This document shows positions 3,896 through 54,030 of a stretch of DNA of 64,000 bases, piece by piece. Within the stretch, counting starts at the first letter, position 1, and every line of letters begins with the position of its first letter. The stretch lies in the sequence record MW373745.1; one strand, 5' to 3'. Made by a program: the position numbers and the translations under genes. Below the pieces are notes generated by a model, which searched no databases, was not told the origin of the DNA, and was given only the letters and a program-made list of their open reading frames with translations.

Positions 3896-3923
3896 ATAAA
3901 TACAAAAAAAACAAGGATTTTAA

Positions 3924-4670
3924 ATGTCAGATAAGTTAAAATTACTTTATGAATATCACGATGCTAATGTACTTATCGAAGAATCAGTTAACGACAAAAA
4001 AGAAAAAGTTAAAAAATATAAAATTGCTGGTATTTTTTCAACAATAGGTGAAAAAAACCGTAACGGTAGAATTTACCCAAAAGAACTCTGGGAAAGTAAT
4101 GTTAAAAAATACCAAGACGTTATAAAAAGCGGTTCTATTAATAGACTTTGTGAGTGGGAACATCCTGAAAGAGGTACAGTTGATCCTATGGAAGCAGTTG
4201 CTGCCATCAATAAACTTGAAATCAACGGCAAGTATGTTATGGGTGAAGCTACATTGTTAGATAATCCAAGAGCTAACCAATTAAAATCCTTAATAGATAA
4301 TGGTATTAAATTGTCTGTATCTAGTAGAGGTTCTGGCAGAGTTAAAAATGGTATTGTCGAATCATTTGATTTAATTACATATGATTTAGTATCTGCACCA
4401 AGCGATTATAATGCTACTATGGAAGGAACATCTATATATGAATCACAAAAAGAATTTGTAATGGTGGATGGTAAATTAGTAGAATCTAAAGATTCTGACA
4501 GTGCTAAAGATTCTGACAGCGATAGCAAAGCTGATACTAAAGATTCGAAAGATTCTGATTCAAACGATTCTAAAGATAATACTGAAGATTCGAAACTAAA
4601 AGAATCTATTCTTAAAGAACATTTCTTAGAGTTTATTGAAATACTTAAGAACAAAAATAAAAACAAATAA
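3924..4670 (+). CDS. Prohead core protease (gp21) with acidic D/S/K tail
   Basis: KNRNGRIYP, EWEHP, VSSRGSG and DLVSAPS motifs. Confidence 0.92.
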   Translation: MSDKLKLLYEYHDANVLIEESVNDKKEKVKKYKIAGIFSTIGEKNRNGRIYPKELWESNVKKYQDVIKSGSINRLCEWEHPERGTVDPMEAVAAINKLEINGKYVMGEATLLDNPRANQLKSLIDNGIKLSVSSRGSGRVKNGIVESFDLITYDLVSAPSDYNATMEGTSIYESQKEFVMVDGKLVESKDSDSAKDSDSDSKADTKDSKDSDSNDSKDNTEDSKLKESILKEHFLEFIEILKNKNKNK

Positions 4671-27793: not shown

Positions 27794-28324
27794 ATGCAAG
27801 ATTTAAAACCTCGAGAACTAAAAACTTATGAAATAGAAGAACTTATAGTTCTAAATACAAAAACTGCAAAAGAACTCAGAGATTCTATGGTAGAATCAAA
27901 CCCAATTTGTCCTTTATGCGGTTCTAAGATCTTCAATCCTGTACTTGATCACAAACATAGTAAAAAACAAGAAAATTTAGGTGTGCAAGGCGCTGGCTTA
28001 GTCAGAAATGTTATTTGCAGTACTTGTAATATTTTCTTAGGTAAAATGGAAAATAATTATAAAAGATATAGAATTCAAAACTTGGCTGATTTTTTAAGAA
28101 ATGCTGCAAATTATTTGGAAACTGATACAACACCGTATGTATACCCAAGTGAAGCAAAAAAATTAAAAGAAATTTTTCCGAAGTCTTTATATAATAAACT
28201 GATTAAAGCAATTCATTTAGAAACTAAAAAAGATATTAATTATATTAAAAAGAAAATTAAGTATACAAAATATCTTAGTCAAAAAACAAAAGATTTATTA
28301 ATATCTTATAATTTGTATTCTTAA
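27794..28324 (+). CDS. Recombination endonuclease VII (gp49-like)
   Basis: CPLCG...VLDHKH...VRNVICSTCNIFLG. Confidence 0.85.
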   Translation: MQDLKPRELKTYEIEELIVLNTKTAKELRDSMVESNPICPLCGSKIFNPVLDHKHSKKQENLGVQGAGLVRNVICSTCNIFLGKMENNYKRYRIQNLADFLRNAANYLETDTTPYVYPSEAKKLKEIFPKSLYNKLIKAIHLETKKDINYIKKKIKYTKYLSQKTKDLLISYNLYS

Positions 28325-28387: not shown

Positions 28388-30091
28388 ATGGGGTTATTAG
28401 AAAGTATAAAAAATAGTATTATAGGTGAAAAAATAGATAGACCATTCTTAGAACAACCTATTAATAAAATAGATACTACAGTTCCATTCGGTAGAGTAAT
28501 AAACACTTTATCTGATGATGAACCTTTAAGATTCCAAACCTTTTTTGATAATGTAAATGACATAACTTATGTTGATAATCTACAAAAAGCATCAGAACAA
28601 GCTCAAAAAATTGATATCTACAGACAAACTGCTAAGATTGCTGAATGTTGGAGTGGTTTAACAGAAATTGTAGACGAAGTCGCATATTGTAGAGATTTCA
28701 AAGATCCTATTAAATTAGAAGTTGATACTTCGAATAAGAAAATAGACATAGCAATATCTAATGCTTTTGAAAAAATAATGAAATTATTTGGAACCCAAAA
28801 ATATCTACATTCTTTTATCAGACAATCTTATATAGACGGCCAAATGAATATATTAATTAAATACCACGATGATAAGAAAAAAGGTATAAAAGAATTATAT
28901 TATTTAGATCCTAGATATCTTTGGTATGATTTAACAGATTCTAAATACAAATACATAGATATAAATTCTTCAGTAGCTCTTAAAAATAATTTCTTAGGAA
29001 ATCAAAGATATATCAATATCAATGGTAAAGCTCCAGTTCGAATAGATCAAGCGGCTTTAGAATACGATATAGAGGAAATAGTTCATCAAAATTTTGGTTT
29101 ATTTTCAGATTCTGGTATTTGTTTAAGTGAATTAGAAGCTTCCGTTAAAACAGCTAATCAATTAAAAACACTTGAAGATTTGTTAATACCTTTAAGATTT
29201 TCAAGATCAATTTCAAGACGTGTATTTAATATAGATTTAAGTGAATTACCGAATTCTAAAGCAGAAGCTTATATGAGGGATTTGACTAATAAGTTCAAAT
29301 ATAAAAAACAATACAACCCAGAAACTGGTGAAGTAACTAATAACCAACATATTGTCACTATGGTCGAAGATTATTGGATTGGTAATAAAGCTGGTGCTAA
29401 AGGTATGCAAGTAGATATCTTGGATGAAACTGGTAATTTAGGAGAACTTGGTGATATTATGTTTTTTTACAAGTTATTATATAGATCTATGGGAATACCA
29501 GTTAATAGAATCTACTTAGATGACCAATCACAACAACCATTATTTGATTTGCAAGCAGATGCTATCACAAACGAGGACATCAAATTCTTCCAAAAAATAA
29601 CTAGGATTCGCCAAGTATACACGGAATTCTTTATGCAAATTCTAAAAAGAGAATTAATTTGTACTAAAGTTTGTACTGAAAAACAATTTCAAGAACTTAA
29701 AGATTCTATTAATATATACTTTAGCGAAGAAAATCAATTTATTGAAAGAATGAATCTAACATTGTTTATGAAACGTATAGATGCATTCTCAACAGCTAAA
29801 GATTTTGGAGGAACAGTTTTACCTGTAGATACATTATATAAAGAAATTTTTAGATTTAATGATGTTGAAATCAAAAAGAATCTTAAAGCTATTCAAAAAG
29901 AATCTAAAAATCCATTGTATAAACAATTTTACAGAGATTTTGAAAGTGGGGATGAATTCAGTTCAGATTCAGATTCTGATTCTGGTGATGAACCTAAATA
30001 CAACGATTCTAATAACAATGCTAATAATACAGATACCGAAGAAGAATATGATAAAACCGGTTTATCTATTAAAAAAGACTCACTGATTTAA
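28388..30091 (+). CDS. Portal protein (gp20)
   Basis: SYIDGQ, LKTLEDLL..R, RRVFNID, MVEDYW and NLGELGDIMFF motifs. Confidence 0.92.
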   Translation: MGLLESIKNSIIGEKIDRPFLEQPINKIDTTVPFGRVINTLSDDEPLRFQTFFDNVNDITYVDNLQKASEQAQKIDIYRQTAKIAECWSGLTEIVDEVAYCRDFKDPIKLEVDTSNKKIDIAISNAFEKIMKLFGTQKYLHSFIRQSYIDGQMNILIKYHDDKKKGIKELYYLDPRYLWYDLTDSKYKYIDINSSVALKNNFLGNQRYININGKAPVRIDQAALEYDIEEIVHQNFGLFSDSGICLSELEASVKTANQLKTLEDLLIPLRFSRSISRRVFNIDLSELPNSKAEAYMRDLTNKFKYKKQYNPETGEVTNNQHIVTMVEDYWIGNKAGAKGMQVDILDETGNLGELGDIMFFYKLLYRSMGIPVNRIYLDDQSQQPLFDLQADAITNEDIKFFQKITRIRQVYTEFFMQILKRELICTKVCTEKQFQELKDSINIYFSEENQFIERMNLTLFMKRIDAFSTAKDFGGTVLPVDTLYKEIFRFNDVEIKKNLKAIQKESKNPLYKQFYRDFESGDEFSSDSDSDSGDEPKYNDSNNNANNTDTEEEYDKTGLSIKKDSLI

Positions 30092-38443: not shown

Positions 38444-41400
38444 ATGGCTATTATAAAAGAAACATTACCTTTTACATATGATGAAATATATCAAGATATA
38501 GCTAAAAGATTAATTGAAAAAGGCTGGGATGGAGGAGCTTATGAAGGTTCTAATGGAGCAATCTTAGCATCTGTTTTATCTTATATCGTAAGTTCTTTGA
38601 ACTTCAATACAGCAGTAAATGTTAATGAGAATGTTTTAACTTTGGCGACCAAACGTAAAAATGTTATACAAGATGCTAGGGTTTTGTCTTATGAACCTTC
38701 TCATAAAAAATCTACAATACTCGAAATAACATTAAGTTTTACCAGAACTGGTTATTTTAAAATACCAAAATACAGCACATTTATCATAAATGGTTTTACT
38801 TACAATTATTTAGGCGATGATTTAGAATTCAATATAGATAAAATAGGAGCTACAACTACAATACAAGTAAAAGAAGGTACATTAATTAAAAACGAAGAAT
38901 ATCCTGATATTTTAACTTATAAAATAGATGAAAAATTTGAATACATAGATATACCTTGGAATGATGTAGAAGATGATGGTGTGGAATGTTATGTTACTTA
39001 TTATGATACTTTTGGAAATTTATCGGATAATGCAACTTTTGTAAAATCTTCTTTTAATTTAATTGATATTAAGGATAGTACCAATAATAAGTTCTTTAGA
39101 AAAGATGATGTGGATACTGGCAATGCTAGGATATATTTTCAACTAGGGACTGCTGGTACTAAGTTGCCTTCTAATACGAGAGTTTATATTAATGTTTTAA
39201 GAACTTCTGGAATAGACGCATATTATGAGAGATGTGATTCAGCTTCCGTTAACGGTGATCTTGGCTCTTTTTGTAAAATATTGACTTCTGGTAAAGATGT
39301 ACCTGTATTAGTTTCCCAAGCTCAGGATGAAGAAAGTATAGAGTCTATTAAAACAAATGCACCAATGTTTTATAATAGTGCTTCAAGAACAGTAACTATA
39401 CACGATTATAATTCAGTTATAAAAACACACTCTAGTGTTAAAAATGTAGTGACTTGGGGAGGCGAAGATGAATATCCAGTTGCTCCAGGTAATTTGTATT
39501 TTTCAGCTGAACCCCGAAGAAAAGAACCAGAATTTACAATCTTTAAAAAAGTTCAACAAAGTGATGGAACATATACTTACAAAAAAGAAAACTCTACTTT
39601 AGCAAACGGTGAATTATTGAATACTACTGAAATGAGTACCAATCAATACTACATAAAAGAATCTTATAATGATCCTGACACATTATATTTAAATGATGGT
39701 GAAGTTGTTTCTGCAGAAAAAGATGCTAACGGTTATAAAAACCCAGGTATTTTTGACTTAGTAGATACATATAATTTACCAGCACTTAAGAATAATCTTA
39801 AAAATCCAACATATGTTAATATAGATTTACAAGTTCTTATTAAACAATATCCATTTGGTACTCCAAAATCAGATATTCGTAAAAAAATCTATGCAAAGAT
39901 TCGTGAAAAAATGGCAGAAATTGAAAAATTTGAAGGTGAATTTATCCATTCTAACTTAGTTAGGCATTTAGACAATGAATTGGGTCTGGGTAATGGTATA
40001 GAAGTAAATCCATATTTTAGTTTATTACTAAGTGAAGAAAACTGTGTAAAACAATTTAAAGAAAATAAAGACTTTAGTAAAGTAAATTGTTTTTATGCTA
40101 AATCATATGACAAATTATCTAAGAATTTAGTTCTTAGTGTTTATTTTAGTTTATTGGCTAGTGTGGGTGATAAATTAGAAGTTTATTTTAATAAAGAAAG
40201 TTTGCCGTTTATTTTAGACAATACAGATCATTATACTTATGAATTAACGGATACTGATATCAACCAATCTTACAAATCTTTTTATTTTAAGGATGTGGGA
40301 TTTGATGAAGAATCATTAAATGTTAGAATAATATCATACGATGGATTGACCACCTATGGGGGAAACGACATTAATTTATACAACTTAAAAAATAAAACCG
40401 TATTTTTTAATGTTAATATAGGTAATGAATTATCAGTTATTAAAATAGCATTGCCAAGATTTGTTAGTGTAGGTGATAGTTTTAAAGTTTACGGTTTATA
40501 TGGTTCTCGCAAAGCAGAACAATTAATATATGATTTCTATATTACTGAAGAGATACTTTCACAAGGCTATCTACAATGTGATGATTTACAAAGGGGTAAA
40601 TATGCAGGTCTTGTAGGAGCAAGTGATTATAAAGTTGTTTATACTTGTAATAGAGAATCTTTAAAACCAAGTGATAGTGAAGAACCTGATAGCAATGGGT
40701 TAAAATCTAATCAACTATTAGGAACTGCCAGTGGTTCTTGGGAATCTGCAGTTAACCAAACTGAAAGTCAAGATAATGTTTTTGGTGATATAGAAACTTC
40801 TAATTTATATTATAACTGGTATGAAGATTCTGACGGTCAAATAGATATTAGAGTTTGGATACCAAGCTCAGTAAAAGCCAATGATACATTATTAATAGAT
40901 TATGCTCAAAAAACTACAAGTATTGTTATAACAGACGCTATGATAGCTCAAAGGCAGTTTGATACAAAAATAGATGGTATATTATTAGATGTTACAAAAA
41001 TTTCATTTGGTAGTGCTGATGGTTCTATCGGTATATATCCTACTTACGTAGAAAGACAAAATGAATTAACACCTGTAGAAGATGATAGAATTCAATTTGT
41101 TGCTAAACAGTTTGAAAATATAACAGAATATGCGCCCACAACCACATTTGATAGAGAAGTTCAATTAAAATCTAATGAAAAAATTACATTTTATGTTAAT
41201 TATAATAATAAATTCGACGTCAGGAATTTAATTGCAAATCACGATGATGCATTAGATTCATATACAGTCAGTATACCGGAAGGTTCTCCATTAAAATACG
41301 AAGCGCCATACGTAGTATTAAATAATTATAGAAAAACAGGAACTTTTAATTTTAATTTAGACGTTCAAGTAAAACGTGGTGATTTATTATATCAAAATCA

Positions 41401-42088
41401 AATAGTATATGTTAAAGAAGCTGCGGTAGATTTATCAGTGGATGAAGGCCCAGGAGGAGCTTATGTATATTTAGATTTACCAATTGAAGGTATATATGAT
41501 ACCAAGGGTCAAATAATACCAGAAAATATACCCACAATAGAATGGGCTTTATTTGCTAAAGCTAATCCTGCAGAAGGTGAGGATAATGAACCTATTTGTT
41601 TTGAGGAAATACAAGAACCTAGCAAAACACATAAAGTTATCCCAGCAAATTTAACAAATTATGTGGCGGAACAAAAAATAGTTGCTAACTATGTTATAGA
41701 TGAAGAATCTGTTAAGACTATGTTACCATTTTATACAACAGTTGAAGAATATATTAATTTGGATCTATCTAAAGTTGCTTATATAAGAATACCTATTAAA
41801 TTAATGAATAGAAGTGCTGCTACGCCAGAAGAAGGTGAACAAATTGTAGGTTCTTATACAATATTTAATTCAAGGATACCTTATATTAGAGTTAAATTCC
41901 AAACAAAAATTTTTCAACCTGGATATAATTATGAATTTATGTTAAATTATCCATCACATAATTTTAAATTAATAAGAAATTCAATATTTAGACTTAGATC
42001 TGTAGTTTTTGATGATTTATTGGATTATCAAGAAGTTAGAGATAGTTTAAGAGCTGGTGATATTGATATGAGCACTATGAGTGTTTAA
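38444..42088 (+). CDS. Baseplate wedge protein gp6-like, extended
   Basis: YEGSN...LSY...NENVLTLATKRKNV...SYEP; ESIESIKTNAP...RTVTIHDY; WGGED. Confidence 0.85.
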   Translation: MAIIKETLPFTYDEIYQDIAKRLIEKGWDGGAYEGSNGAILASVLSYIVSSLNFNTAVNVNENVLTLATKRKNVIQDARVLSYEPSHKKSTILEITLSFTRTGYFKIPKYSTFIINGFTYNYLGDDLEFNIDKIGATTTIQVKEGTLIKNEEYPDILTYKIDEKFEYIDIPWNDVEDDGVECYVTYYDTFGNLSDNATFVKSSFNLIDIKDSTNNKFFRKDDVDTGNARIYFQLGTAGTKLPSNTRVYINVLRTSGIDAYYERCDSASVNGDLGSFCKILTSGKDVPVLVSQAQDEESIESIKTNAPMFYNSASRTVTIHDYNSVIKTHSSVKNVVTWGGEDEYPVAPGNLYFSAEPRRKEPEFTIFKKVQQSDGTYTYKKENSTLANGELLNTTEMSTNQYYIKESYNDPDTLYLNDGEVVSAEKDANGYKNPGIFDLVDTYNLPALKNNLKNPTYVNIDLQVLIKQYPFGTPKSDIRKKIYAKIREKMAEIEKFEGEFIHSNLVRHLDNELGLGNGIEVNPYFSLLLSEENCVKQFKENKDFSKVNCFYAKSYDKLSKNLVLSVYFSLLASVGDKLEVYFNKESLPFILDNTDHYTYELTDTDINQSYKSFYFKDVGFDEESLNVRIISYDGLTTYGGNDINLYNLKNKTVFFNVNIGNELSVIKIALPRFVSVGDSFKVYGLYGSRKAEQLIYDFYITEEILSQGYLQCDDLQRGKYAGLVGASDYKVVYTCNRESLKPSDSEEPDSNGLKSNQLLGTASGSWESAVNQTESQDNVFGDIETSNLYYNWYEDSDGQIDIRVWIPSSVKANDTLLIDYAQKTTSIVITDAMIAQRQFDTKIDGILLDVTKISFGSADGSIGIYPTYVERQNELTPVEDDRIQFVAKQFENITEYAPTTTFDREVQLKSNEKITFYVNYNNKFDVRNLIANHDDALDSYTVSIPEGSPLKYEAPYVVLNNYRKTGTFNFNLDVQVKRGDLLYQNQIVYVKEAAVDLSVDEGPGGAYVYLDLPIEGIYDTKGQIIPENIPTIEWALFAKANPAEGEDNEPICFEEIQEPSKTHKVIPANLTNYVAEQKIVANYVIDEESVKTMLPFYTTVEEYINLDLSKVAYIRIPIKLMNRSAATPEEGEQIVGSYTIFNSRIPYIRVKFQTKIFQPGYNYEFMLNYPSHNFKLIRNSIFRLRSVVFDDLLDYQEVRDSLRAGDIDMSTMSV

Positions 42089-42153
42089 TTATCTAATTAA
42101 ATATATTTTAAGTTATTTTATGATATAATTATGCAAATTAAAATAACGAGGCT

Positions 42154-42825
42154 ATGATGAAATTTTCAGATTTTTTAGAAGAGCAAGCAATTGCTAAATC
42201 AGGTGATTATGATTTTGGTAACTTGGATTACATAGGCGCTGGAGGTTTGATATCAAAGAAAGTTGTGAAAGTTCTCCATAAGTTCAATTTTGATATAAAT
42301 GGTGATAATACAGAATTATTCATTATTGAATGTAATGCTAACCATCCTAAACAAAAATATTATTGTGTAGCTAAAGAAGAAATAGATAAAAGATTTGAAC
42401 CTTATACAACAAGATTTAAGATATTAGCTGCTATACTTTTGGAATATACAACAAAATACAGAGGTTTAGGTTATGGTCCTCTTAGAATAGTTAAAGGTGT
42501 CGAAACTTTAAGATCATACAGAGGTGGTGGGATAGGTAAAAAATTATATACTATTTTAGTGGATGATTTTAAATGGGTATTGATGGGTGATTCTGAACAA
42601 TATGAAGGTGCAAGAAACTTATGGACTTTCTTGTCTAAATCACCTGGGTTTAACGTTGATATAGTTGAGTTAGCAACAGGTAAAATTATTGCTAAAAATG
42701 TTAAATTAAAAGATGCTTTAGATCCAAGAATTTGGACCGATGAAGATTTATTTTTAACAGGAACTAAAGAAGAAAGAATACGTGGTAGATTTAATAGATT
42801 GGTATTAACTAAAGTTACAAATTAA
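42154..42825 (+). CDS. GNAT-like protein 1 with putative capsid-targeting N-terminus
   Basis: VETLRSYRGGGIGKKLY acetyl-CoA motif A; GDSEQYEGARNLW. Confidence 0.6.
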   Translation: MMKFSDFLEEQAIAKSGDYDFGNLDYIGAGGLISKKVVKVLHKFNFDINGDNTELFIIECNANHPKQKYYCVAKEEIDKRFEPYTTRFKILAAILLEYTTKYRGLGYGPLRIVKGVETLRSYRGGGIGKKLYTILVDDFKWVLMGDSEQYEGARNLWTFLSKSPGFNVDIVELATGKIIAKNVKLKDALDPRIWTDEDLFLTGTKEERIRGRFNRLVLTKVTN

Positions 42826-42835
42826 AGGAGCTAAA

Positions 42836-43501
42836 TTGAAGTTTTCAGATTTTTTAGAAGAGCAAGCAATTGCTAAATCAGGTGATTATGATTTTGGGAA
42901 TTTAAACTATATTAATAAGTATGGTCTGACTTCGATAGAATATACATTTGATAAATCACCTTTTGTATATAAAGTTTATTATAATGGTAAAGAATATTTT
43001 TTTTATCGTAGAGAATCTTACCATATTTTAGCTACTAAAGTACCTGAAGATTACCCGACTAAAGATAACCCTAATGGTACCAAAGATAGATTTAGTCCTA
43101 TAGCTATGATTAGATTATTGCCTACAGATAAAATTAAAAGAATGGATTATAAAAATGTTTATACAGTTAGTGCTGTAGAAGTTGATAGAGACCATAGAGG
43201 TATCAGATTAGGCAAATTATTATATTATCTAGCAACTACCGTTCTTAAATATACTTTATTAGGTGATTCTGAACAATATGAAAATGCTAGGAGAATATAT
43301 TATTCTTTTAGTAATAACCCAGGATTTACAGTGGATATAATTAAATTAGATCAAGGTATCTTAGCAAAGAATGTAAATCTAAATGATCACAACGATGAAA
43401 GAGTTTGGAGTACAACACCCGATAAAGTAGGAACTTTACATAGAGTGGTTCTTAAAAGTGTTCATATGGAATCTAAGGTAGAAGTCAAAAAATTAAAATA
43501 A
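42836..43501 (+). CDS. GNAT-like protein 2 (paralog) with identical N-terminus
   Basis: VEVDRDHRGIRLGKLLY; GDSEQYENARRIY; 56 bp identical to copy 1. Confidence 0.6.
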   Translation: MKFSDFLEEQAIAKSGDYDFGNLNYINKYGLTSIEYTFDKSPFVYKVYYNGKEYFFYRRESYHILATKVPEDYPTKDNPNGTKDRFSPIAMIRLLPTDKIKRMDYKNVYTVSAVEVDRDHRGIRLGKLLYYLATTVLKYTLLGDSEQYENARRIYYSFSNNPGFTVDIIKLDQGILAKNVNLNDHNDERVWSTTPDKVGTLHRVVLKSVHMESKVEVKKLK

Positions 43502-43558: not shown

Positions 43559-46500
43559 GTGTTTAAAAGTATAGCTAAAAACTTAGTACCAGAAAATTAC
43601 AAATCTAATAAATTTATTATGGACGTCCTTGACGTTTTTGTAGATTATATCTATGATAATTCAAGCCTAGCGATTGACATCAATAATTTATATAATTCTA
43701 AAAATGAAGTTCTATATGAAGAAATTATTAAAACATATGCTGCAAACTTTTATAAGACTATAACCGATGGTTCAAAAAATCATAAACTTGCAGAAGCTGT
43801 TAGAAAAGCGCACAAAAAATATGGTTTTGATTTTAGTGAAACGCAATTAGATATAAATGTAATACACTTATTATCACAAGAACAATTAGAATTATTTAAA
43901 AACTTTCAACAATCTAAAGGAACTTTAAGATCTATTGAGTTTATATATCGTATTATAGAACAATTAAATATTGAAAGTTTTGTATTAGAAACCGACGGTC
44001 AATTAACAATAGAGCCCGGTGAAAATATATTTGAATACCGCGTTTACGGATCTATGTTACCAGAAATATTCGAAGCATTTGTTAAGCCTTTAGCACATCC
44101 AGTAGGTTGGACTTACTTATTTACAAGAACTTACGTTCTTAAATTCGAAGATTATTTCTTATGCAAAGAAGTTTACGATGTAAATGTTTTTAGAGTAACT
44201 TGTGAAGATTCTGATTGTGAAGATAATTTTAAAACAAATACCGGATATCTTTTTGAAACTGACATTAATAATAATATAATATATGAAAATAATAAACCAA
44301 AAATGTATAAAGCTGATGGAAATCCAGTATTTAATGTTACAAGATTTGGTGTCAATTACCCAGAATTAACATTAGAATCTGAATTAAAATTAGTTAAAGA
44401 TCCTACTATTAGAACTATTGAAAAATCCAGCATAAAAGGTAATGACAAATTAATTGTATATTTTGAATCTGGTGAAAGATTAGAACAAAATTCAAACCCT
44501 AAGAATTTAATATTATATTATTATAAAGGTATTAATTCATTAAATCAAGAAATTAAAAAAGATTATACTGATTTCTTAAGCAAATGTGCTTTGGAACTTA
44601 ATTATGTTAGAAGAGTTGTAACCACAGTTAAAGACAAATATCAATTTCAAGTAGATTTTGGTTTAGCTAGCACTACTGGTAAATTTGCAGCTATTGGCGC
44701 TGGTAATATGTATCTAGGTTCAGATACTTGGGTTCTTGGTAAAAATAGAATCAATGCAAATACACCAGTAACTTATGGAACTAGAGTTCGTAATAAAGTT
44801 TTACAAACTTCTGACTTTAAAGCATTATATAAGAAAAATGATAATTCTATTAGACAGGTATTTGATAAAGTTTATTCTGGTTTTGATGATCACGTAAAAT
44901 CAAGTACTTGTAATTTTATTTTAGAATCTGACAATTTATATCATTATAGATTATATAATCCAAATGCAATATTTTTTGAATTAATTAATACTTACGGGTA
45001 TAGAGTTCGCGCTAAAATAAAATATAACGAAGATTCATTAGAAGTTATAGCTGAAGATGAACTTAAAAATACACAATTATTATATATAGATAAAACATTA
45101 TTCAGTAAATACAATTCACAAGTTTACAAAGATTTTAAAGAATCTATGAATAAGCCTTTAGGTCAATATTATACAGTCCTTAAAAAAGGTGTTAATTACT
45201 TGAATATTGTAGATTCTAATGGTTATATAGTTAAAGGTAATTATAGGCTTGTAGATTCTGAATATAGGCTTTATTTAAATATAAAAGATCCTGTAACTAT
45301 TCAATTTATTGATGATACTTATGAATACGATTCAAGACCATTTCAAATTATTGATGCCGAATTAAGTTATAATAAAGATTCTAAATTATATGAATATACT
45401 ACACCAGAAAAAGAATACTATTTTGTCAGCGTAGCTAATCGTATTAGCAATGTAGATTTGGACATTATGTATATTGCTGGTTTACAAAAAGGTTTTAAAA
45501 TAACTTCAAGCACTGCTCAAAAAATAAGAGTATATGTTATAGATAATACTTCTAAAAGATTTCCGATAACTATACTGAGTGCAACTAATGAAACTATACA
45601 AGCAAAAGAAAATAGTATATTCTTAGGTTTAATCAATGCTGATAACCAATACGTTGAAGGACAAATAGTTTACGATTCTGAAGGTAAATTAGCAACATTA
45701 GATTGTAATGCAAAAACAAATAATTTAAGTTTATTATACTTAGATTATTCTGCAAGTATTAAAAATCCAATAACTATTAAATCTACAACATTTGATATTG
45801 CTGGAAATTTTTCAGAAGTTAATGATAAAAGAGGTAAATTCCTTTATAATTTTAGAATCGAAAATATTATGATTGTTAATATATTCGATAAAAATAATCA
45901 AAGAATACAATTAGACTATGATATTGAAAATACTGGGGTATCTTTTTATACTGATACAAATGAAGCTATTACAATACAATACTTTGATAATATAGATGAA
46001 GGTATACCAAGAACATATACAATAGATGCTGAATTTAAATTAGATACTAGTTACATTAATTATAACGCAAAAATATTTAAATATAAAGATATATTATTAA
46101 ATATGGATACTAGTACAAACAAATATGTTTATAAGCACAACGAAATGAAAACTTATCCTTTAGTTGTTATGGATACTGATGGAAATGTTTTAGACGTTGA
46201 AATAGGTATTTTAACTACTGGATTTAAAATATCTTATTCTGAAGGTATAAAAGTAAGAATATATTATTTAGATGATACTAAAAATAGGGCTGATGTTACT
46301 TATAATAAAGCTGGAGACCCGGACTCCACAAAATTATTATATGCTGTTAAAAATGGTGTCATAGTTAAACAAGATATCAATACAGTGTCTACTGAAGATT
46401 TTTATTCATTTTCAAGATTAAAAACTCTTAAAATTAAGAAAGCTGATTTAAAAGCTGTGGAAAGTAACGACCCAGATTCAAAACTAGGTAAATATAAATT

Positions 46501-47719
46501 TATTAAAAATATTGAATATGGTTTGCCAGTTATGGCCGGTTTTAACAATGATTTAAAATTCAAAGTTAATGAAGATTCTATAACAATTTACACAGCAACT
46601 AAAAAAGATATTAATATTAGATACGCAGAAAAAGTTAACGAAGAAAGTTTCTTATATACTTATAGTATAAGAAAAGATGATGATTTATTTATAGATGCGC
46701 AAAAAGATTCTATAAAATATTTAATAGATTATCAATATGATTATTTAAATAATAGAATTATTTTTACAAAAGAAGACGATGATATTGTCAAATTGTTTTT
46801 CTTAAAGAATAAACACAATAAGAAAACAATACTTAGTATTAATAACGCAAACTTTGAGGATGTTGATTTTCCAATTAAAATTTATTTAAATGACGACTTT
46901 GTTGAGTTTGAAAATAAGGAATCTATGCAATTAGATGTTAATCCATTAGATCTTAAATTCAATCAAGATATTAAAAATAGAAATTCAACAATTAGAGCTA
47001 TTAATAAAGATCTTGAAGTATTGGAACAAATAGATTTTAATTTGGCACCACAATATACCTTTAAAGCACTTGGTGATTATCTCTATGAGATAGATTTTAA
47101 TAAGATTAAATTCAAAGAAAATAAACTTAATGAAGAATCCTTGTGGTATAGAGAAAGTTCAGTTTATCATAATCATTATGTAGGATATTTTGCAGCTAAT
47201 AATGTTCAGCCAACTCAGGTATTTACTGGTACGTCGAACAAATTAGATTATGAACTCAGAGAAACAAACCCTTGGGGATTAACAGCCATAGATACATTTG
47301 AATTAACAGGAACTGCTACAAATGATGGATTTGATGTTAATTTTGAATTTATTGATTCTTGGCCAAAAATCACAGAAGTCTATAAAAATGATTATACAGG
47401 ATTCTATCAAAATAAATGGGGTTGGCAATCGGGATATGTTGACGTTTATAAAACTACTAGGGATCTTGAAAGATTTAATGAAAAATACGAAAGATTAGAA
47501 CACGCCAGCGTATACCAAATGGATGATTATATTGTTATAGGATCTAATGATATAACAAAAGATTATATGTTTAAATGGTATCCAACTAGTAAGTCAAATG
47601 ATTTTAGTGATAGTTTCTTAAGAAATGGTCAAGTCTCTGAACCAGTGGCACCTAATAAAATATATACTGGAAAATATGATAGAGAACCCGACAATATAAT
47701 TAATAAAACAAATACTTGA
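43559..47719 (+). CDS. Baseplate wedge protein gp7-like, extended
   Basis: SKGTLRSIEFIYR...VKPLAHPVGW; located after gp6. Confidence 0.65.
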   Translation: MFKSIAKNLVPENYKSNKFIMDVLDVFVDYIYDNSSLAIDINNLYNSKNEVLYEEIIKTYAANFYKTITDGSKNHKLAEAVRKAHKKYGFDFSETQLDINVIHLLSQEQLELFKNFQQSKGTLRSIEFIYRIIEQLNIESFVLETDGQLTIEPGENIFEYRVYGSMLPEIFEAFVKPLAHPVGWTYLFTRTYVLKFEDYFLCKEVYDVNVFRVTCEDSDCEDNFKTNTGYLFETDINNNIIYENNKPKMYKADGNPVFNVTRFGVNYPELTLESELKLVKDPTIRTIEKSSIKGNDKLIVYFESGERLEQNSNPKNLILYYYKGINSLNQEIKKDYTDFLSKCALELNYVRRVVTTVKDKYQFQVDFGLASTTGKFAAIGAGNMYLGSDTWVLGKNRINANTPVTYGTRVRNKVLQTSDFKALYKKNDNSIRQVFDKVYSGFDDHVKSSTCNFILESDNLYHYRLYNPNAIFFELINTYGYRVRAKIKYNEDSLEVIAEDELKNTQLLYIDKTLFSKYNSQVYKDFKESMNKPLGQYYTVLKKGVNYLNIVDSNGYIVKGNYRLVDSEYRLYLNIKDPVTIQFIDDTYEYDSRPFQIIDAELSYNKDSKLYEYTTPEKEYYFVSVANRISNVDLDIMYIAGLQKGFKITSSTAQKIRVYVIDNTSKRFPITILSATNETIQAKENSIFLGLINADNQYVEGQIVYDSEGKLATLDCNAKTNNLSLLYLDYSASIKNPITIKSTTFDIAGNFSEVNDKRGKFLYNFRIENIMIVNIFDKNNQRIQLDYDIENTGVSFYTDTNEAITIQYFDNIDEGIPRTYTIDAEFKLDTSYINYNAKIFKYKDILLNMDTSTNKYVYKHNEMKTYPLVVMDTDGNVLDVEIGILTTGFKISYSEGIKVRIYYLDDTKNRADVTYNKAGDPDSTKLLYAVKNGVIVKQDINTVSTEDFYSFSRLKTLKIKKADLKAVESNDPDSKLGKYKFIKNIEYGLPVMAGFNNDLKFKVNEDSITIYTATKKDINIRYAEKVNEESFLYTYSIRKDDDLFIDAQKDSIKYLIDYQYDYLNNRIIFTKEDDDIVKLFFLKNKHNKKTILSINNANFEDVDFPIKIYLNDDFVEFENKESMQLDVNPLDLKFNQDIKNRNSTIRAINKDLEVLEQIDFNLAPQYTFKALGDYLYEIDFNKIKFKENKLNEESLWYRESSVYHNHYVGYFAANNVQPTQVFTGTSNKLDYELRETNPWGLTAIDTFELTGTATNDGFDVNFEFIDSWPKITEVYKNDYTGFYQNKWGWQSGYVDVYKTTRDLERFNEKYERLEHASVYQMDDYIVIGSNDITKDYMFKWYPTSKSNDFSDSFLRNGQVSEPVAPNKIYTGKYDREPDNIINKTNT

Positions 47720-48493: not shown

Positions 48494-48595
48494 GGTTTTT
48501 TATTATATAATATATTTTTGATCTTTTTAAATTGTGTTGTTACGAACTTTTTTTGAGTTTTTACAGTTTATACTATAGTATTAAATCTAAAACTT

Positions 48596-48695
48596 NNNNN
48601 NNNNNNNNNNNNNNNNNNNNNNNNNNNNNNNNNNNNNNNNNNNNNNNNNNNNNNNNNNNNNNNNNNNNNNNNNNNNNNNNNNNNNNNNNNNNNNN
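48596..48695. other. Assembly gap (100 N) within a repeat region
   Basis: Run of N. Confidence 0.99.
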
Positions 48696-48805
48696 AAAGC
48701 AATATTAAAAAGTATAAAAAATGCTTGAGTTTTTACAGTTTATACTATAGTATTAAAGCTTAAAGCAATATTAAAAAGTATAAAAAATGCTTGGGTTTTT
48801 TTTAA
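48696..48805 (+). repeat. Repeat array, same core as 12-530
   Basis: Cores at 48701 and 48777. Confidence 0.9.
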
Positions 48806-48882
48806 TTTTCACCATAATATATGTAATTTAAGTTTACTTTAAGTTTAAATATGCAAGACTAAAGCTTAATAAATACTTAAAA

Positions 48883-49308
48883 ATGAAGTTCAAACAAGGC
48901 ATTTATATACCAAAAAACCCAGAGAAATATATACATAGTTATACAAAAATGAATGAACACACTGAATATCCTGTTTATAGGAGTTCTTGGGAGCTTAGTT
49001 TCTTCAAATTTTGTGATTATTCACCCTCTATTACTAAATGGTCTTCTGAGCCAGTCGGTATAAAGTACTTTAATCCCGTCAAAAAACGACAATCCACATA
49101 TTATCCCGATGCTATGATTATTCGTAACGATATAACATTTTTAATAGAGATTAAGCCTAAATCTCAATTACCAGGTTCTAACTCAAAATCCAGTTATGAT
49201 AAACTTTCAGCGGCAGTTAACGAAGCCAAGTATAATGCCGCAAAATCTTATTGTGAAGCAAACAATATGCAATTCATAATCTTAAGTGATTCTTTCTTTA
49301 AATCTTGA
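48883..49308 (+). CDS. Head completion protein gp4 (TnsA-like endonuclease fold)
   Basis: PKNPEKY, YRSSWE, WSSEP, YYPD and IEIKP motifs. Confidence 0.9.
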   Translation: MKFKQGIYIPKNPEKYIHSYTKMNEHTEYPVYRSSWELSFFKFCDYSPSITKWSSEPVGIKYFNPVKKRQSTYYPDAMIIRNDITFLIEIKPKSQLPGSNSKSSYDKLSAAVNEAKYNAAKSYCEANNMQFIILSDSFFKS

Positions 49309-49489
49309 TTTTAAAGTTTTAAGCTTTTTTTGGTTTTAAAACTTAAGTTTAGTATTCAAAAATTTTTGACCTTTTTAATATAATATATTATAATATATTA
49401 TAATATAAAAACTTTTTTCAAAAATTTTAGTAGTTTTACAGTTGTTTAGAATTTGTTTTAAAATCTAAACTAAAGTTTCAGTTTAAAAC

Positions 49490-49775
49490 TTAAAGCAATA
49501 TTAAAAAGTATAAAAAATGCTTGGCTTTTTAGTAGTATATACTATAGTATAATGCTTAAAGCTTAAAGCAATATTAAAAAGTATAAAAAATGCTTGGCTT
49601 TTTAGTAGTATATACTATAGTATATGCTTAAAGCTTAAAGCTTAAAGCAATATTAAAAAGTATAAAAAATGCTTGGCTTTTTAGTAGTATATACTATAGT
49701 ATAATGCTTAAATCTTAAACTAATATTAAAAAGTATAAAAAATGCTTGGCTTTTTAGTAGTATATACTATAGTAT
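49490..49775 (+). repeat. Tandem repeat array (73-79 bp units)
   Basis: Cores at 49497, 49570, 49649 and 49722; each unit holds palindrome TAGTATATACTA and a variable number of CTTAAAG. Confidence 0.95.
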
Positions 49776-49875
49776 NNNNNNNNNNNNNNNNNNNNNNNNN
49801 NNNNNNNNNNNNNNNNNNNNNNNNNNNNNNNNNNNNNNNNNNNNNNNNNNNNNNNNNNNNNNNNNNNNNNNNNNN
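49776..49875. other. Assembly gap (100 N)
   Basis: Run of N. Confidence 0.99.
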
Positions 49876-49983
49876 CTTTTTGTTAGATCAACACAGAAGA
49901 CTGCAAATATTTAAACCATTCTAATAAATTTAAGAATTTTTTAAGCTTATATATTATATAATATACCAATTGAAAGGAAAATA

Positions 49984-50643
49984 ATGAAACTGACTTACAA
50001 ACACAAATTGTATACCAAACATCAAGATATTATTAACACATATCTGCGTTTAAAAGTAGAGTTTAATTTATTCAAGCTGGATTACAAACGACTTAGATAT
50101 TCAAGTTTATTCACACAAAATACAAGACTTAAAACTCAAAAACAAATAGAAGAGCTTGAAACGAAACTAACCAAAAAAGGTCTCAATACACAAAAATTAC
50201 GCAAGTTATACACTAAAATTGTTAACAAAAAACCTTTCAATGATTTTGAACAAATCATCATTAATAATTTTGTAGAAAATGGCAAAAAAGCACCACAATT
50301 ATTCAAACACGAACGTAAATTCGATAATAGATTTACAAGCCTACTATTAGAACGTAAAAAACGTCGCGCTAAAGCAGCTAAAGAAGTATACACAAGAAGA
50401 CCATTATCTCCAGAAAAACAAAAAGCTCAGCAATTAGTTCCATATATTTTTCAATTCATTAAACTCAGAACTATGGAAAAATTTGGATATAATGAAGATT
50501 TAGCAGTTGAAATAACTGGCAGAATTTTTGGACCTGGGTGTGAAGAAGCTCTTGATATGTATTTAAAAGAATTCAGAGATTTGTATGGTAATACAGACCA
50601 AGCTTTAGAGCATTTCAAAAAAGCTGAACTATTAGCTAATTAA
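49984..50643 (+). CDS. Hypothetical basic protein
   Basis: Promoter motif plus AAGGA RBS. Confidence 0.55.
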   Translation: MKLTYKHKLYTKHQDIINTYLRLKVEFNLFKLDYKRLRYSSLFTQNTRLKTQKQIEELETKLTKKGLNTQKLRKLYTKIVNKKPFNDFEQIIINNFVENGKKAPQLFKHERKFDNRFTSLLLERKKRRAKAAKEVYTRRPLSPEKQKAQQLVPYIFQFIKLRTMEKFGYNEDLAVEITGRIFGPGCEEALDMYLKEFRDLYGNTDQALEHFKKAELLAN

Positions 50644-51899: not shown

Positions 51900-52625
51900 A
51901 TGTTAGACAAAGTTTTAAGCAACGATAGCTTTAAAGATGTTCTAACAGAATCAGTTAAATCAGAAATTGAATCTGTGTTTAATGAAGCTGTTGAAATTAA
52001 AGCTGTTGAAATAGCTAATGAACAAATCGAACTCGAAAAAATCAAGTTAGTAGAAGAGTTCAAAGAAGCTAAAAAAGAACTTGAATCTAAAATTACTGAA
52101 AATATAGATTCATTCATTAATGAAGAACTTTATAAATTTAAAGACGAAGTTCTTGAAAAATTAGACGCTGTTGTTGAGAATGAAAAGGCTGCTACTCTAG
52201 TAAGTATATTTGATAACTTAGTAGATGTTGCTGGATCAAACATACTCGAAAATTATGCAAACAAAGATTCTGAATTAAGTGATCAATTTGATAAATTAGT
52301 TGTTGAAAATAGAGAACTTAAAGCTGAACTTGCGATTCTTCAAGAATCTAAAAAAATTGATGAATTAGCTGCTAATTTAAATCTTGTAGAAAGTGAAAAA
52401 TTTAAAAAATTAGCTAGCTTGGTAGAACGAGGTGAAGGTTTTGAATCTAAATTAGAAGCGTTATTTGAAGCTTGTAAAAAAACAAACGAAGATGATTCTG
52501 ATGATTCTGATGATTCTGATGATTCAAAGGATTCAAAGGATTCAAAGGATTCAAAGGATTCAAAGGATATCAAAGAAAGTTTTAAAAACAAAGCAGGCGC
52601 TGACATTAACTGGGCTAACTACTAA
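51900..52625 (+). CDS. Prohead scaffold protein (gp22)
   Basis: Acidic coiled coil, FNEAV motif, directly upstream of gp23. Confidence 0.8.
   Translation: MLDKVLSNDSFKDVLTESVKSEIESVFNEAVEIKAVEIANEQIELEKIKLVEEFKEAKKELESKITENIDSFINEELYKFKDEVLEKLDAVVENEKAATLVSIFDNLVDVAGSNILENYANKDSELSDQFDKLVVENRELKAELAILQESKKIDELAANLNLVESEKFKKLASLVERGEGFESKLEALFEACKKTNEDDSDDSDDSDDSKDSKDSKDSKDSKDIKESFKNKAGADINWANY
52491..52568 (+). repeat. In-frame 9-bp tandem repeats (GATGATTCT, then AAGGATTCA)
   Basis: Encode DDS/KDS repeats. Confidence 0.9.
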
Positions 52626-52695: not shown

Positions 52696-54030
52696 ATGGA
52701 TAAAAATGTAAGTCTTAATGAAAAAGTAGAGTCTTATATTAAAGATTCAAAATACGCTGCTTTAAATGAAAGTGAAGCTGTATTGATGAGTACATTGCTC
52801 AGCAACACTGCTTTAGCATCTCAAGGTGCACTTGTAGGTGAAAGTGTTATCTCTAGTGATATCGCTCAATTTACACCAATCTTAATGCCAATTGTAAGAA
52901 GGGTTTACCCAGCATTAGTTGCTAATCAACTTTTAGGTATTCAACCTTTAACAATGCCTACAGGTTACATTTATGCATTAGTCAATAGATATACAGGTAA
53001 TAAAAAAGACGGTGCTATATCTCCAGTTTCTAAAGCTCAAATTCTTGTGTTTGAAGCTAATGTGACTAAAGGTGATACTGTTACAGGTACAACTTCAAGT
53101 GCGACAGGTAAAATTATACACGTTGAAAAAGATGGTAAAACTGCTTTAGTTCAGTTAACTAGCGATAAAAAATTCCAAAACGAAGCTGCTAATAAAGGAA
53201 CTAAAATCGTTAACGTTTATTCTAACGAAGCTACTTTCCATAAAATCTTAGAAACTTATTCAGGACCATATAGTACAGCTGACGGTGAAAAACTTGCTGA
53301 AGATATGAACACTGTAGGTTTTGGAATTGAAAAAGATACTGTTGAGGCAAAAACAAGAAAACTTAAAGCTGAATATACTTTAGAAATGTATGAAGATTTA
53401 AAAAATCAACACGGTGTGCTTGCAGATGGACATTTAGCTAATCTTATTGCTGCTGAAATGCAAACTGAAATAGATCGTGAGATTATCAATTTCGTAAACA
53501 ATACAGCTACCGTTGTCGCTGATACTTTAAGTCCAGGTGCTGAACACAAAGAAGCTGGTAGATGGGAAATTGAAAGATATAGATGTAATGCTATCAAAAT
53601 AGATTTAGAAGCAAGAAACATCGGGTTAATGACAAGACGCGGTTCAGGTAATACATTGCTTGTATCTCCAAAAGTTGCTACTATGTTAGATCAAATCGGT
53701 ACATTTAAATTTGCTTCTAGTTCAAGCAATATAGCTACTGATGTATTTACTGGTGATGTAGGGACTTATGATGGTAGATATAATGTAATTGTTGATCAAT
53801 ATGCTAAATCTGATTATATCACTGTTCTTTATAAGGGTACAACCGCTCAAGATAGTCTCGGATTCTTCTGTCCATATGTACCATTAAGCTTCCAAAAAGT
53901 AATGAATCAAGAATCAGGACAACCAGGTATGATTGCAAGAACAAGATATGGCTTAGCTACTAATCCACTTGAACCAGAAAATTACGCAAGAACATTCGGT
54001 GTAGATTTAACAGGAACTATTTTAGCTTAA
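52696..54030 (+). CDS. Major capsid protein (gp23)
   Basis: VRRVYP.L.A...GIQPL..P.G, AKTRKLKAEYT.E..DLK..HG, EIDREI, FFCPYVPL and TRYG motifs. Confidence 0.96.
   Translation: MDKNVSLNEKVESYIKDSKYAALNESEAVLMSTLLSNTALASQGALVGESVISSDIAQFTPILMPIVRRVYPALVANQLLGIQPLTMPTGYIYALVNRYTGNKKDGAISPVSKAQILVFEANVTKGDTVTGTTSSATGKIIHVEKDGKTALVQLTSDKKFQNEAANKGTKIVNVYSNEATFHKILETYSGPYSTADGEKLAEDMNTVGFGIEKDTVEAKTRKLKAEYTLEMYEDLKNQHGVLADGHLANLIAAEMQTEIDREIINFVNNTATVVADTLSPGAEHKEAGRWEIERYRCNAIKIDLEARNIGLMTRRGSGNTLLVSPKVATMLDQIGTFKFASSSSNIATDVFTGDVGTYDGRYNVIVDQYAKSDYITVLYKGTTAQDSLGFFCPYVPLSFQKVMNQESGQPGMIARTRYGLATNPLEPENYARTFGVDLTGTILA

What the first reader, a model, noticed from the sequence alone, without database searches (positions are those of the whole stretch)
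42154..43501. Tandem GNAT-like proteins sharing a T4-type capsid-targeting leader: candidate injected acetyltransferases
Seen: both begin MKFSDFLEEQAIAKSGDYDFGNL, with 56 identical bp (42163-42218 = 42842-42897), then diverge while keeping acetyl-CoA motif A (RGxGIG-like) and GDSEQYE. Established: T4 internal proteins use a roughly 10-aa capsid-targeting sequence (MKTYQEFIAE) that gp21 removes after an (I/L)xE site; FLEE fits this pattern. Inference: these enzymes are packaged in the head and injected to acetylate host targets (anti-defence or host takeover), with a shared leader kept identical while the catalytic bodies diversify.
Basis: partly seen in the sequence, partly recalled or inferred. 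Interest (0 to 1): 0.72.

Follow-up and report, generated by a model that had tools for sequence, protein, structure and literature searches.

The report
Head-targeted GNAT-like phage proteins
Two neighbouring genes of a Campylobacter phage encode diverged acetyltransferase-like proteins that carry the same short N-terminal tag that phage T4 uses to load proteins into its head, so they are very probably cargo enzymes delivered with the DNA, and they belong to a large undescribed family of such cargo.

Summary
The window is Campylobacter phage CJLB-13 (Firehammervirus). Genes A (42157-42825) and B (42836-43501) are tandem paralogs, 40% identical. Their first 23 residues are identical and 56 nt match exactly.

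- Fold: AlphaFold models (pLDDT 89.8 and 77.7) give a GNAT core, and every top PDB match is a GNAT acetyltransferase. Sequence similarity stays below Pfam's threshold. B has a degenerate acetyl-CoA motif.
- Virion: published mass spectrometry of purified phage IBB_35 virions found both orthologs.
- Leader: T4 ipII and ipIII, fetched here, show the same picture, a shared leader ending in (L/I)xE and about 47 identical nt. A and B have aromatic residues at 3 and 6, Leu at 7 and Glu at 9, the spacing of the T4 targeting and processing positions. The ordered fold starts right after Glu9.
- Family: a profile search finds 410 related clusters. The Glu is kept in 91% of them. In uncultured T4-like contigs, members sit beside the prohead protease or in arrays of unrelated genes that share that phage's own version of the leader.
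- Head machinery: the window encodes a gp21-type protease, a T4-type scaffold and the major capsid protein.

Not shown: removal of the leader, head rather than tail location, injection, and catalysis. This is a new family within a known kind.

The parts
42157..42825 (+). Gene A: 222-aa GNAT-like protein (an in-frame ATG at 42154 gives 223 aa). GAGG at 42148-42151 favours the 42157 start.
   Evidence: phrog_15502; model m4704285c319f, pLDDT 89.8; GNAT hits; ortholog is IBB_35 gene 2-4, found in virions
42157..42183 (+). Leader of A, codons 1-9 (MKFSDFLEE): predicted capsid-targeting propeptide. Predicted prohead-protease cut after Glu9 (L7-x-E9).
   Evidence: pLDDT below 50 only for residues 1-9; Glu kept in 91% of family columns; P3 is L/I/V in 91%; same spacing as T4 ipII/ipIII
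42520..42537 (+). Motif A of gene A (RGGGIG), the acetyl-CoA pyrophosphate-binding loop between strand 4 and helix 3
42836..43501 (+). Gene B: 221-aa paralog with a TTG start and AAGGAG at 42825-42830. It departs more from the family pattern.
   Evidence: model m7d93a4059346; ortholog is IBB_35 gene 2-3, found in virions at 20.4% coverage
42836..42862 (+). Leader of B, codons 1-9, the same peptide as in A
43196..43213 (+). Degenerate motif A of gene B (RGIRLG: Arg where 77% of relatives have Gly)
42163..42218 (+). First copy of the 56-nt exact repeat (leader plus the first residues of the mature domain)
42842..42897 (+). Second copy of the 56-nt exact repeat
3924..4670 (+). gp21-type prohead core serine protease, the enzyme predicted to remove the leader
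   Evidence: Pfam PF03420 Peptidase_S77, E 9.4e-21; tblastn with T4 gp21; IBB_35 ortholog found in virions
51900..52625 (+). T4-type capsid assembly scaffolding protein (gp22-like), the core to which a targeting leader would bind
   Evidence: Pfam PF25623 T4_CASP, E 1.1e-13
52696..54030 (+). Major capsid protein (gp23-like). Its N-terminal extension holds two LNE sites ahead of the Gp23 domain.
   Evidence: Pfam PF07068, E 1.7e-104; N-terminus read
28388..30091 (+). Portal protein (gp20-like)
   Evidence: phrog_213; tblastn with T4 gp20
38444..42088 (+). Upstream neighbour: gp6-like baseplate wedge protein. No terminator-like site separates it from A.
43559..47719 (+). Downstream neighbour: 1386-aa virion protein of unknown role (split into genes 2-2 and 2-1 in IBB_35, both found in virions)

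Best explanation
A and B are internal head proteins of a T4-like Campylobacter phage. Each is made late as a precursor. Its first nine residues form a capsid-targeting propeptide that binds the scaffolding core of the prohead. The gp21-type prohead protease (window 3924-4670) then cuts after Glu9 of the L-x-E site. The roughly 24-kDa GNAT-fold body stays inside the head with the DNA and enters the cell with it. There A, and possibly B, transfers an acyl group from acyl-CoA to a host target at the start of infection, by analogy with the injected ADP-ribosyltransferase Alt of T4. B has a weakened cofactor motif and may be a partner or a non-catalytic binder. The nucleotide identity of the two 5' ends is kept by selection on the leader and by occasional gene conversion between the tandem copies, as in T4 ipII and ipIII.

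Shown: paralogy, the shared leader, the GNAT-like fold, presence in virions, presence of the protease and scaffold, and variation of the leader with the phage that carries it in relatives. Inferred: cleavage, head location, injection, catalysis and the target.
For: Virion: IBB_35 genes 2-4 and 2-3, the orthologs of A and B, are among 38 proteins found by ESI-MS/MS in purified virions (PMC3322345 Table S2; numbering checked).

Leader compared with T4: ipII and ipIII read from NC_000866.4 have an identical 10-residue leader ending in I-x-E, and ipI has a 19-residue one. In IPIII, residues 4 and 7 carry targeting and residues 8 and 10 carry processing (PMC9026906). A and B have F3, F6, L7 and E9, the same spacing with one residue fewer.

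Nucleotide parallel: T4 ipII and ipIII share about 47 identical nt over the ribosome-binding site and leader, then diverge. SPN3US gp53 and gp54 are 34% identical with 15 identical N-terminal residues (PMC5694885).

Structure: with a 144-sequence alignment, only residues 1-9 fall below pLDDT 50.

Family: 410 clusters at E<=1e-3. The Glu column is 91% Glu. P3 is L 56%, I 27%, V 8%, and P2 is variable.

Context in relatives: in L013 the member lies next to the Peptidase_S77 gene in the head module, and eight neighbours of unrelated size start with the same kind of leader. In L019, 10 of the 13 consecutive genes read there, two family members among them, start with one local leader version. L014, L020 and L004 show the same.

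Pattern counts: 44 of 128 family representatives match the leader pattern, against 1 of 141 T4 ORFs outside the ip genes.

Head machinery: protease, scaffold and capsid genes are in the window.

GNAT: all 50 top PDB matches are GNATs (HAT1, RimI and others; best E 7e-4, probability 1.00 for the best of them). The profile hits arylalkylamine N-acetyltransferase at E 0.0023. Twelve of 144 relatives hit PF00583.
Against: - No peptide-level data show that the leader is removed. The IBB_35 authors saw general agreement between predicted and observed masses, though a 1-kDa loss would not show.
- The genes lie between a gp6-like wedge gene and a large virion protein. A third paralog in IBB_35 follows gp5/gp5.4-like genes. 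That context fits a baseplate role.
- The residue after the Glu is Gln here and mostly Met or Gln in the family. The three T4 ip leaders have Ala there.
- One relative lies in a bacterial MAG contig and keeps a leader-like N-terminus. A P1-like phage homolog lacks it.
- Other CJLB-13 ORFs with a similar N-terminus are few, and only one of them maps to a virion protein.
- Pfam GNAT scores are below threshold (12.1 and 14.7 bits against 20.7). TM-scores to GNATs are only 0.3-0.45.
Confidence: 0.7

Rival explanations
1. A and B are baseplate or tail-associated virion proteins, structural or acting on the cell surface. They are co-expressed and assembled with gp6 and the 1386-aa protein. The shared N-terminus is an assembly or docking peptide for the baseplate, not a head-targeting signal.
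For: Gene order is gp6-like, A, B, 1386-aa protein, tube-like protein, with no terminator between them. All of these are virion proteins in IBB_35. The third paralog follows gp5/gp5.4-like genes.
Against: There is no similarity to any baseplate family. Relatives in other T4-like phages sit beside the prohead protease or in arrays of leader-bearing genes, not in baseplate clusters. The leader varies with each phage's own version and ends in the protease motif. T4 alt, a head-packaged enzyme, also lies next to baseplate genes (PMC5512222).
Confidence: 0.15
2. The 56-nt identity is only the trace of a recent gene conversion between tandem paralogs, or a constraint on the mRNA (translation start region). 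It carries no protein-targeting function.
For: Synonymous sites are identical too, and similarity extends into the ribosome-binding region. One substitution is shared by A and B of phage CC_R7 alone, which suggests conversion.
Against: The same peptide pattern is kept across 410 clusters with different codons, with an invariant Glu, an aliphatic P3 and a free P2. Unrelated neighbouring genes in relatives share the leader. Conversion explains how identity is kept, not why the leader exists.
Confidence: 0.07
3. They are packaged proteins but not enzymes. The GNAT fold serves as a binding scaffold that inhibits a host defence protein, as the T4 internal proteins Ip1-3 inhibit GmrSD-type nucleases.
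For: The T4 internal proteins with known targets, Ip1-3, are non-enzymatic inhibitors (PMC12373910). B has lost the canonical motif A and departs from several columns kept in 77-94% of the family. Similarity to active GNATs is weak.
Against: Motif A is intact in A and in most relatives (G 77%). A block at strand 5 and helix 4 (D, Q, Y, G, A, R, W at 84-99%) is conserved the way an active site is. Alt shows that enzymes are packaged this way.
Confidence: 0.25

Closest known systems
T4 internal proteins IPI, IPII, IPIII (capsid-targeting sequence cargo)
   Same: Short N-terminal leader with aromatic residues at the targeting positions and an (L/I)xE end. The leader is identical between two otherwise diverged genes, with identity at nucleotide level that stops abruptly. 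The phage encodes the gp21-type protease and the scaffold.
   Different: The T4 proteins are small, basic and non-enzymatic inhibitors of GmrSD nucleases. A and B are about 25-kDa GNAT-fold proteins. Their leader is one residue shorter, and the residue after the cut is Gln rather than Ala. There is no sequence similarity outside the leader.
T4 Alt (head-packaged, injected ADP-ribosyltransferase)
   Same: An enzyme carried in the head, made with an N-terminal propeptide that gp21 removes. Its gene lies beside baseplate genes.
   Different: Different fold and chemistry (ADP-ribosyl versus acyl transfer). It is 682 aa, has a 6-7-residue propeptide of another type, and is also processed at the C-terminus.
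SPN3US gp53/gp54 (giant-phage head paralogs)
   Same: Paralogs only 34% identical that share an identical N-terminal 15 residues holding protease sites. The authors read this as similar to a targeting sequence.
   Different: Long propeptides (about 125 residues), an AxE motif, a different phage lineage and an unrelated fold.
RimI-like GNAT domains of phage polyvalent proteins (Iyer et al. 2017)
   Same: GNAT domains predicted to be packaged and delivered with the DNA. RimI is among the best structural matches, and a polyvalent ART protein appears among the viral fold matches.
   Different: Those are domains of multidomain proteins or solo genes without a T4-type leader. Here the proteins are single-domain with a removable targeting leader. 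Sequence relationship was not demonstrated.

Membership tests
T4-type internal head proteins (capsid-targeting-sequence cargo) | N-terminal propeptide of about 10-19 residues with aromatic residues at the targeting positions and an (L/I)xE processing site at its end | tested here: met
   A and B have F3, F6, L7, E9. T4 ipII/ipIII, read from NC_000866.4, have the same spacing at residues 4, 7, 8 and 10. Family-wide, P3 is L/I/V in 91% and P1 is Glu in 91%.
T4-type internal head proteins (capsid-targeting-sequence cargo) | The same leader is shared by unrelated proteins of the same phage | tested here: inconclusive
   Clear in relatives (L013, L014, L019, L020). In CJLB-13 only 5-6 further ORFs have a similar N-terminus: 5 of 226 real starts against 1 of 763 internal Met positions at score >=16. 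One of them is a known virion protein.
T4-type internal head proteins (capsid-targeting-sequence cargo) | The phage encodes a gp21-type prohead protease and a T4-type scaffolding core | tested here: met
   PF03420, E 9.4e-21, at 3924-4670; PF25623 at 51900-52625; PF07068 at 52696-54030.
T4-type internal head proteins (capsid-targeting-sequence cargo) | The protein is present in the mature virion | tested here: met
   From the literature: IBB_35 genes 2-4 and 2-3 appear in the ESI-MS/MS virion list at 7.7% and 20.4% coverage. The B ortholog is 96.8% identical in protein, and the DNA of the region is 95.7% identical.
T4-type internal head proteins (capsid-targeting-sequence cargo) | The leader is removed in the virion; the protein is inside the head and is ejected with the DNA | not testable with these tools
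   No peptide-level or fractionation data are available.
GNAT (acyl-CoA N-acyltransferase) superfamily | Core fold: strand 4, motif A loop, helix 3, strand 5, helix 4, strand 6 | tested here: met
   Secondary-structure order in both models. All 50 best PDB matches of model A are GNATs, probability 0.80-1.00, E from 7e-4.
GNAT (acyl-CoA N-acyltransferase) superfamily | Motif A, Q/R-x-x-G-x-G/A | tested here: inconclusive
   Met in A (RGGGIG). Not met in B (RGIRLG). The Gly column is 77% Gly in the family.
GNAT (acyl-CoA N-acyltransferase) superfamily | Sequence match to a curated GNAT model above its threshold | tested here: not met
   PF00583 scores 12.1 and 14.7 bits against a cut-off of 20.7. 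Twelve of 144 relatives reach E<0.01, best 7.6e-5. The profile against PDB gives 4fd5 at E 0.0023.
GNAT (acyl-CoA N-acyltransferase) superfamily | Binds acyl-CoA and transfers the acyl group | not testable with these tools
   Needs a solved structure with the cofactor, or biochemistry.
T4-type baseplate proteins | Homology to a known baseplate family | tested here: not met
   Pfam, PHROGs and fold searches give no baseplate match. Only the gene neighbours are baseplate genes.

The most novel reading that the evidence does not exclude
A large, undescribed family (at least 410 sequence clusters, almost all from uncultured T4-like phages) of GNAT-fold enzymes is loaded into phage heads by the capsid-targeting leader and injected with the DNA. 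It would be a second class of injected enzyme after Alt, one that acylates a host defence, translation or signalling component in the first seconds of infection. In Firehammerviruses a catalytic copy (A) would work with a degenerate copy (B).
Probability: 0.35. Interest if true: 0.8.

Novelty: new member of a known kind. Interest (0 to 1): 0.62.

Why it matters
Internal head proteins are the first phage products to meet the host, yet only T4 Ip1-3 and Alt have known roles. This finding adds a whole protein family with an enzyme fold to that class. It shows that the T4 head-targeting leader works as a recognisable tag far outside the coliphages, in Campylobacter phages and many uncultured T4-like phages. 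That gives a simple sequence rule for listing injected cargo in metagenomic phage genomes.

At tblastn sensitivity, Firehammerviruses are the only cultured phages that carry full-length members of the family. They are being developed for Campylobacter biocontrol, so it is useful to know what they deliver into the cell. No paper in the searchable library links 'capsid targeting sequence' with 'acetyltransferase'.

Tried and rejected
- Third copy in the window: tblastn with A, B and the IBB_35 third paralog finds only A and B in the whole 210-kb CJLB-13 genome.
- The search for related loci with the broad alignment failed because no stretch was conserved enough.
- PADLOC gave no hit for A, B or the bacterial homolog. 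PHROGs gave one unrelated hit, a DprA-like protein, among the bacterial neighbours.
- Mapping other leader-like CJLB-13 ORFs to the virion list by gene length was ambiguous. By tblastn, the 169-aa ORF is IBB_35 gene 1-17, which is not in the virion list. The 265-aa ORF exists only in F379 and CJLB-13. The 199-aa ORF is gene 5-25, which is in the list.
- Promoter-like sites around the genes are no more frequent than chance, and there is no terminator.
- Fletcherviruses (NCTC12673 group) have no homolog at tblastn E<1e-3.
- A purely baseplate reading was considered and ranked lower (see rivals).
All T4 sequence used afterwards was read from NC_000866.4, fetched under an accession shown by papers.

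Full report
Identity of the window. Megablast places the region in Campylobacter phage CJLB-13 (MW373745.1) at 100% identity, with window and record coordinates the same. It matches 14 other Firehammervirus (CP220-like, T4-related) records at 91-99.9%.

The observation. Two ORFs on the + strand lie between a gp6-like baseplate wedge gene (38444-42088) and a 1386-aa gene (43559-47719). A runs from 42157 to 42825; an extra in-frame ATG at 42154 is too close to the GAGG at 42148-42151. B runs from 42836 to 43501 and starts with TTG, preceded by AAGGAG. IBB_35 and CP220 have ATG at that position. A and B are 40% identical (E 2e-44). Residues 1-23 are identical, and 42163-42218 equals 42842-42897 exactly.

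What the proteins are. Both belong to phrog_15502, of unknown function. Pfam gives only sub-threshold GNAT hits centred on motif A. An AlphaFold model of B from 18 sequences (pLDDT 77.7, pTM 0.80) and one of A from 144 sequences (pLDDT 89.8, pTM 0.85) both show the GNAT order: strand 4, motif A, helix 3, strand 5, helix 4, strand 6. Foldseek against the PDB returns GNAT acetyltransferases almost exclusively. For model A these include HAT1, RimI, NatD, streptothricin and spermidine acetyltransferases, with E from 7e-4 and probability 1.00 for the best matches. Model B gives weaker matches of the same kind. TM-scores are only 0.3-0.45, so this is a very divergent branch. A family profile hits arylalkylamine N-acetyltransferase 2 (4fd5) at E 0.0023, and 12 of 144 relatives hit PF00583 at E<0.01. 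A has a canonical motif A (RGGGIG). B has RGIRLG and departs from several columns that are 77-94% conserved in the family.

They are virion proteins. Carvalho et al. 2012 (PMC3322345) identified 38 proteins in purified IBB_35 virions by ESI-MS/MS. Gene 2-4 (669 bp, directly after gp6) and gene 2-3 (666 bp) are both on the list, at 7.7% and 20.4% coverage, together with gp6 and the two products of the downstream large gene. I checked the numbering against their Table S1 and the GenBank record. The B ortholog is 96.8% identical to the window's B.

The leader. I fetched T4 (NC_000866.4, an accession shown by papers) and read the N-termini of its head proteins. ipII and ipIII share a 10-residue leader that ends in I-x-E. 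ipI has a related 19-residue leader. Kuhn and Thomas (PMC9026906) summarise the genetics: the first 10 residues of IPIII suffice for packaging, residues 4 and 7 carry targeting, and residues 8 and 10 carry processing. A and B have Phe3, Phe6, Leu7 and Glu9, the same pattern with one residue fewer after Met-Lys. At nucleotide level, T4 ipII and ipIII are identical for about 47 nt across the ribosome-binding site and leader and then diverge abruptly. That is the picture seen in the window. A second precedent is SPN3US gp53/gp54, paralogs 34% identical with 15 identical N-terminal residues, which the authors read as similar to a targeting sequence (PMC5694885). In the deep-alignment model of A, residues 1-9 are the only segment below pLDDT 50, so the ordered domain begins just after the predicted cut.

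The family. An exhaustive profile search found 410 cluster representatives at E<=1e-3 and 176 at E<=1e-10, mostly 200-230 aa. Anchored on the Glu, position P3 is Leu 56%, Ile 27% and Val 8%. P2 is variable. The following residues, (M/Q)(A/S/P)(I/V)A..G(D/N), are strongly conserved and belong to the fold. The leader before the Glu varies from 3 to about 24 residues. Some members have a leader almost identical to that of T4 ipII/ipIII (P0134 matches 8 of 10).

Genomic context of relatives. This is the strongest evidence.
- L013 is a 47-kb T4-like contig. The member lies directly downstream of the Peptidase_S77 prohead protease, inside the head module (tube, portal, scaffold, Gp23). Eight neighbouring genes of 61 to 295 residues, one with an SprT-like domain, begin with the same style of leader, with Glu at position 10 or 12.
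- In L019, 10 of the 13 consecutive genes read there, two family members among them, begin with one local version that has Leu instead of Lys at position 2.
- In L014, two tandem family paralogs and four other genes share a 13-15-residue version.
- L020 and L004 show the same.

The leader therefore follows the phage rather than the protein family, as expected of a portable targeting signal. A strict leader pattern matches 44 of 128 family representatives. It matches only the ip genes plus one other ORF among 144 ORFs in 51 kb of T4.

The phage has the machinery. The window encodes a gp21-type protease (3924-4670; PF03420, E 9.4e-21), a T4-type scaffolding protein (51900-52625), the Gp23 capsid protein (52696-54030) and the portal (28388-30091). 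The capsid protein has two LNE sites ahead of the Gp23 domain.

Maintenance of the identity. In seven Firehammervirus genomes all 14 copies encode the same 23 residues, and their nucleotides differ at 0-5 of 66 positions. The rest of the region differs by up to 9% between genomes, and A and B themselves share only 40% of their residues. One substitution is shared by A and B of CC_R7 alone, which suggests gene conversion. Selection on the leader and on the conserved N-terminal strand, together with conversion between tandem copies, is the simplest account.

Against the head reading. The genes sit in a baseplate cluster with no terminator between them. A third paralog, found in IBB_35 and possibly WX1, follows gp5/gp5.4-like genes and was not detected in virions. 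Gene position is weak evidence, however. The T4 ip genes are scattered, and T4 alt lies next to baseplate genes 54 and 48, an association Iyer et al. noted for the Alt family (PMC5512222). One relative lies in a bacterial MAG contig beside an MmeI-type restriction gene and keeps a leader-like N-terminus; its neighbours gave no informative hits. A P1-like phage homolog lacks the leader. No data show the cut itself.

Comparison with what is known. The mechanism proposed is that of T4 internal proteins and Alt. Membership in the class of leader-bearing head cargo is met on leader anatomy, protease and scaffold presence, and virion presence. It is untested on cleavage and ejection. Membership in the GNAT superfamily is met on fold, half met on motif A, and not met on curated sequence thresholds. 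Packaged GNAT domains have been predicted in polyvalent proteins. I found no paper linking the capsid-targeting sequence with an acetyltransferase. Among 50,697 cultured phage records, full-length family members appear only in Firehammerviruses; a few P1-like phages give a partial, remote match.

Verdict. It is a new member, in fact a new large family, of a known kind. Confidence is 0.7 for head-targeted cargo and lower for catalysis and for any particular target.

Declared slip. Once, I recalled a T4 leader from memory in my reasoning. All T4 letters used later came from the fetched record.

Noticed in passing
window 3891-3898 and whole window: The octamer TATAAATA (the T4 late-promoter type) is strongly depleted: 8 copies against 28 expected. 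One copy sits just upstream of the gp21-type protease gene.
   Followed up: partly
MW373745.1 67413-67922, 88953-89750, 110566-111165, 117316-117720, 180256-180612 (outside the window; loci L008-L010): Five further ORFs of the same phage begin in the same style as A and B (aromatic at 3 and 6 or 7, and in four of the five L/I at 7), with an (L/I)xE site within 9-18 residues. The 199-aa one is IBB_35 gene 5-25, a virion protein next to the gp13 neck gene. The 169-aa one (gene 1-17) was not detected in virions.
   Followed up: partly
L002 3989-4495 (IBB_35 contig 1, gene 1-37): A third, distant paralog (34% identical) lies downstream of gp5/gp5.4-like genes. Its GenBank start is 23 codons too late and hides a 7-residue leader ending in L-F-E. 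It is absent from CJLB-13 and not on the virion list.
   Followed up: partly
CP21 (HE815464.1) and CJLB-14 (MW074126.1), orthologs of window 42154-43501: The B ortholog is annotated as two CDSs in CP21 and matches in two pieces. In CJLB-14 the A/B region comes back in three pieces. The genes may be interrupted in those records, or the records may hold sequencing errors.
   Followed up: no
L005 and L006 10001-10651 (Delongbacteria MAG contigs): A family member with a leader-like N-terminus lies in a bacterial contig among unannotated genes, near an MmeI-type restriction-modification gene and a PDDEXK_2 gene. It is unclear why a head-targeting style N-terminus is kept there.
   Followed up: partly
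P0108 (663 aa, on a 344-kb contig): A protein with three family-like stretches on a jumbo-sized contig, possibly a fused multi-copy form of the family.
   Followed up: no
L007 4836-5432 (Escherichia phage RCS47; also SJ46 and 673R5): P1-like phages carry a remote, leaderless homolog after the BplB baseplate gene, next to an IS605-family transposase gene.
   Followed up: partly
window about 48500-50000: In the F379 annotation, two long repeat regions with 24-nt core units flank the Holliday-junction resolvase gene (window 48883-49308).
   Followed up: no
window 33983-35227 (- strand) and 27794-28324: A putative transposase gene (F379 annotation) lies between the tail sheath and baseplate genes, and an HNH endonuclease gene lies just upstream of the portal gene. 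Both are mobile-element style insertions in the structural region.
   Followed up: no
L014 13845-14453: The uncultured phage contig that carries tandem family paralogs also encodes a protein with a GmrSD_N domain, the family that T4 internal proteins inhibit.
   Followed up: no
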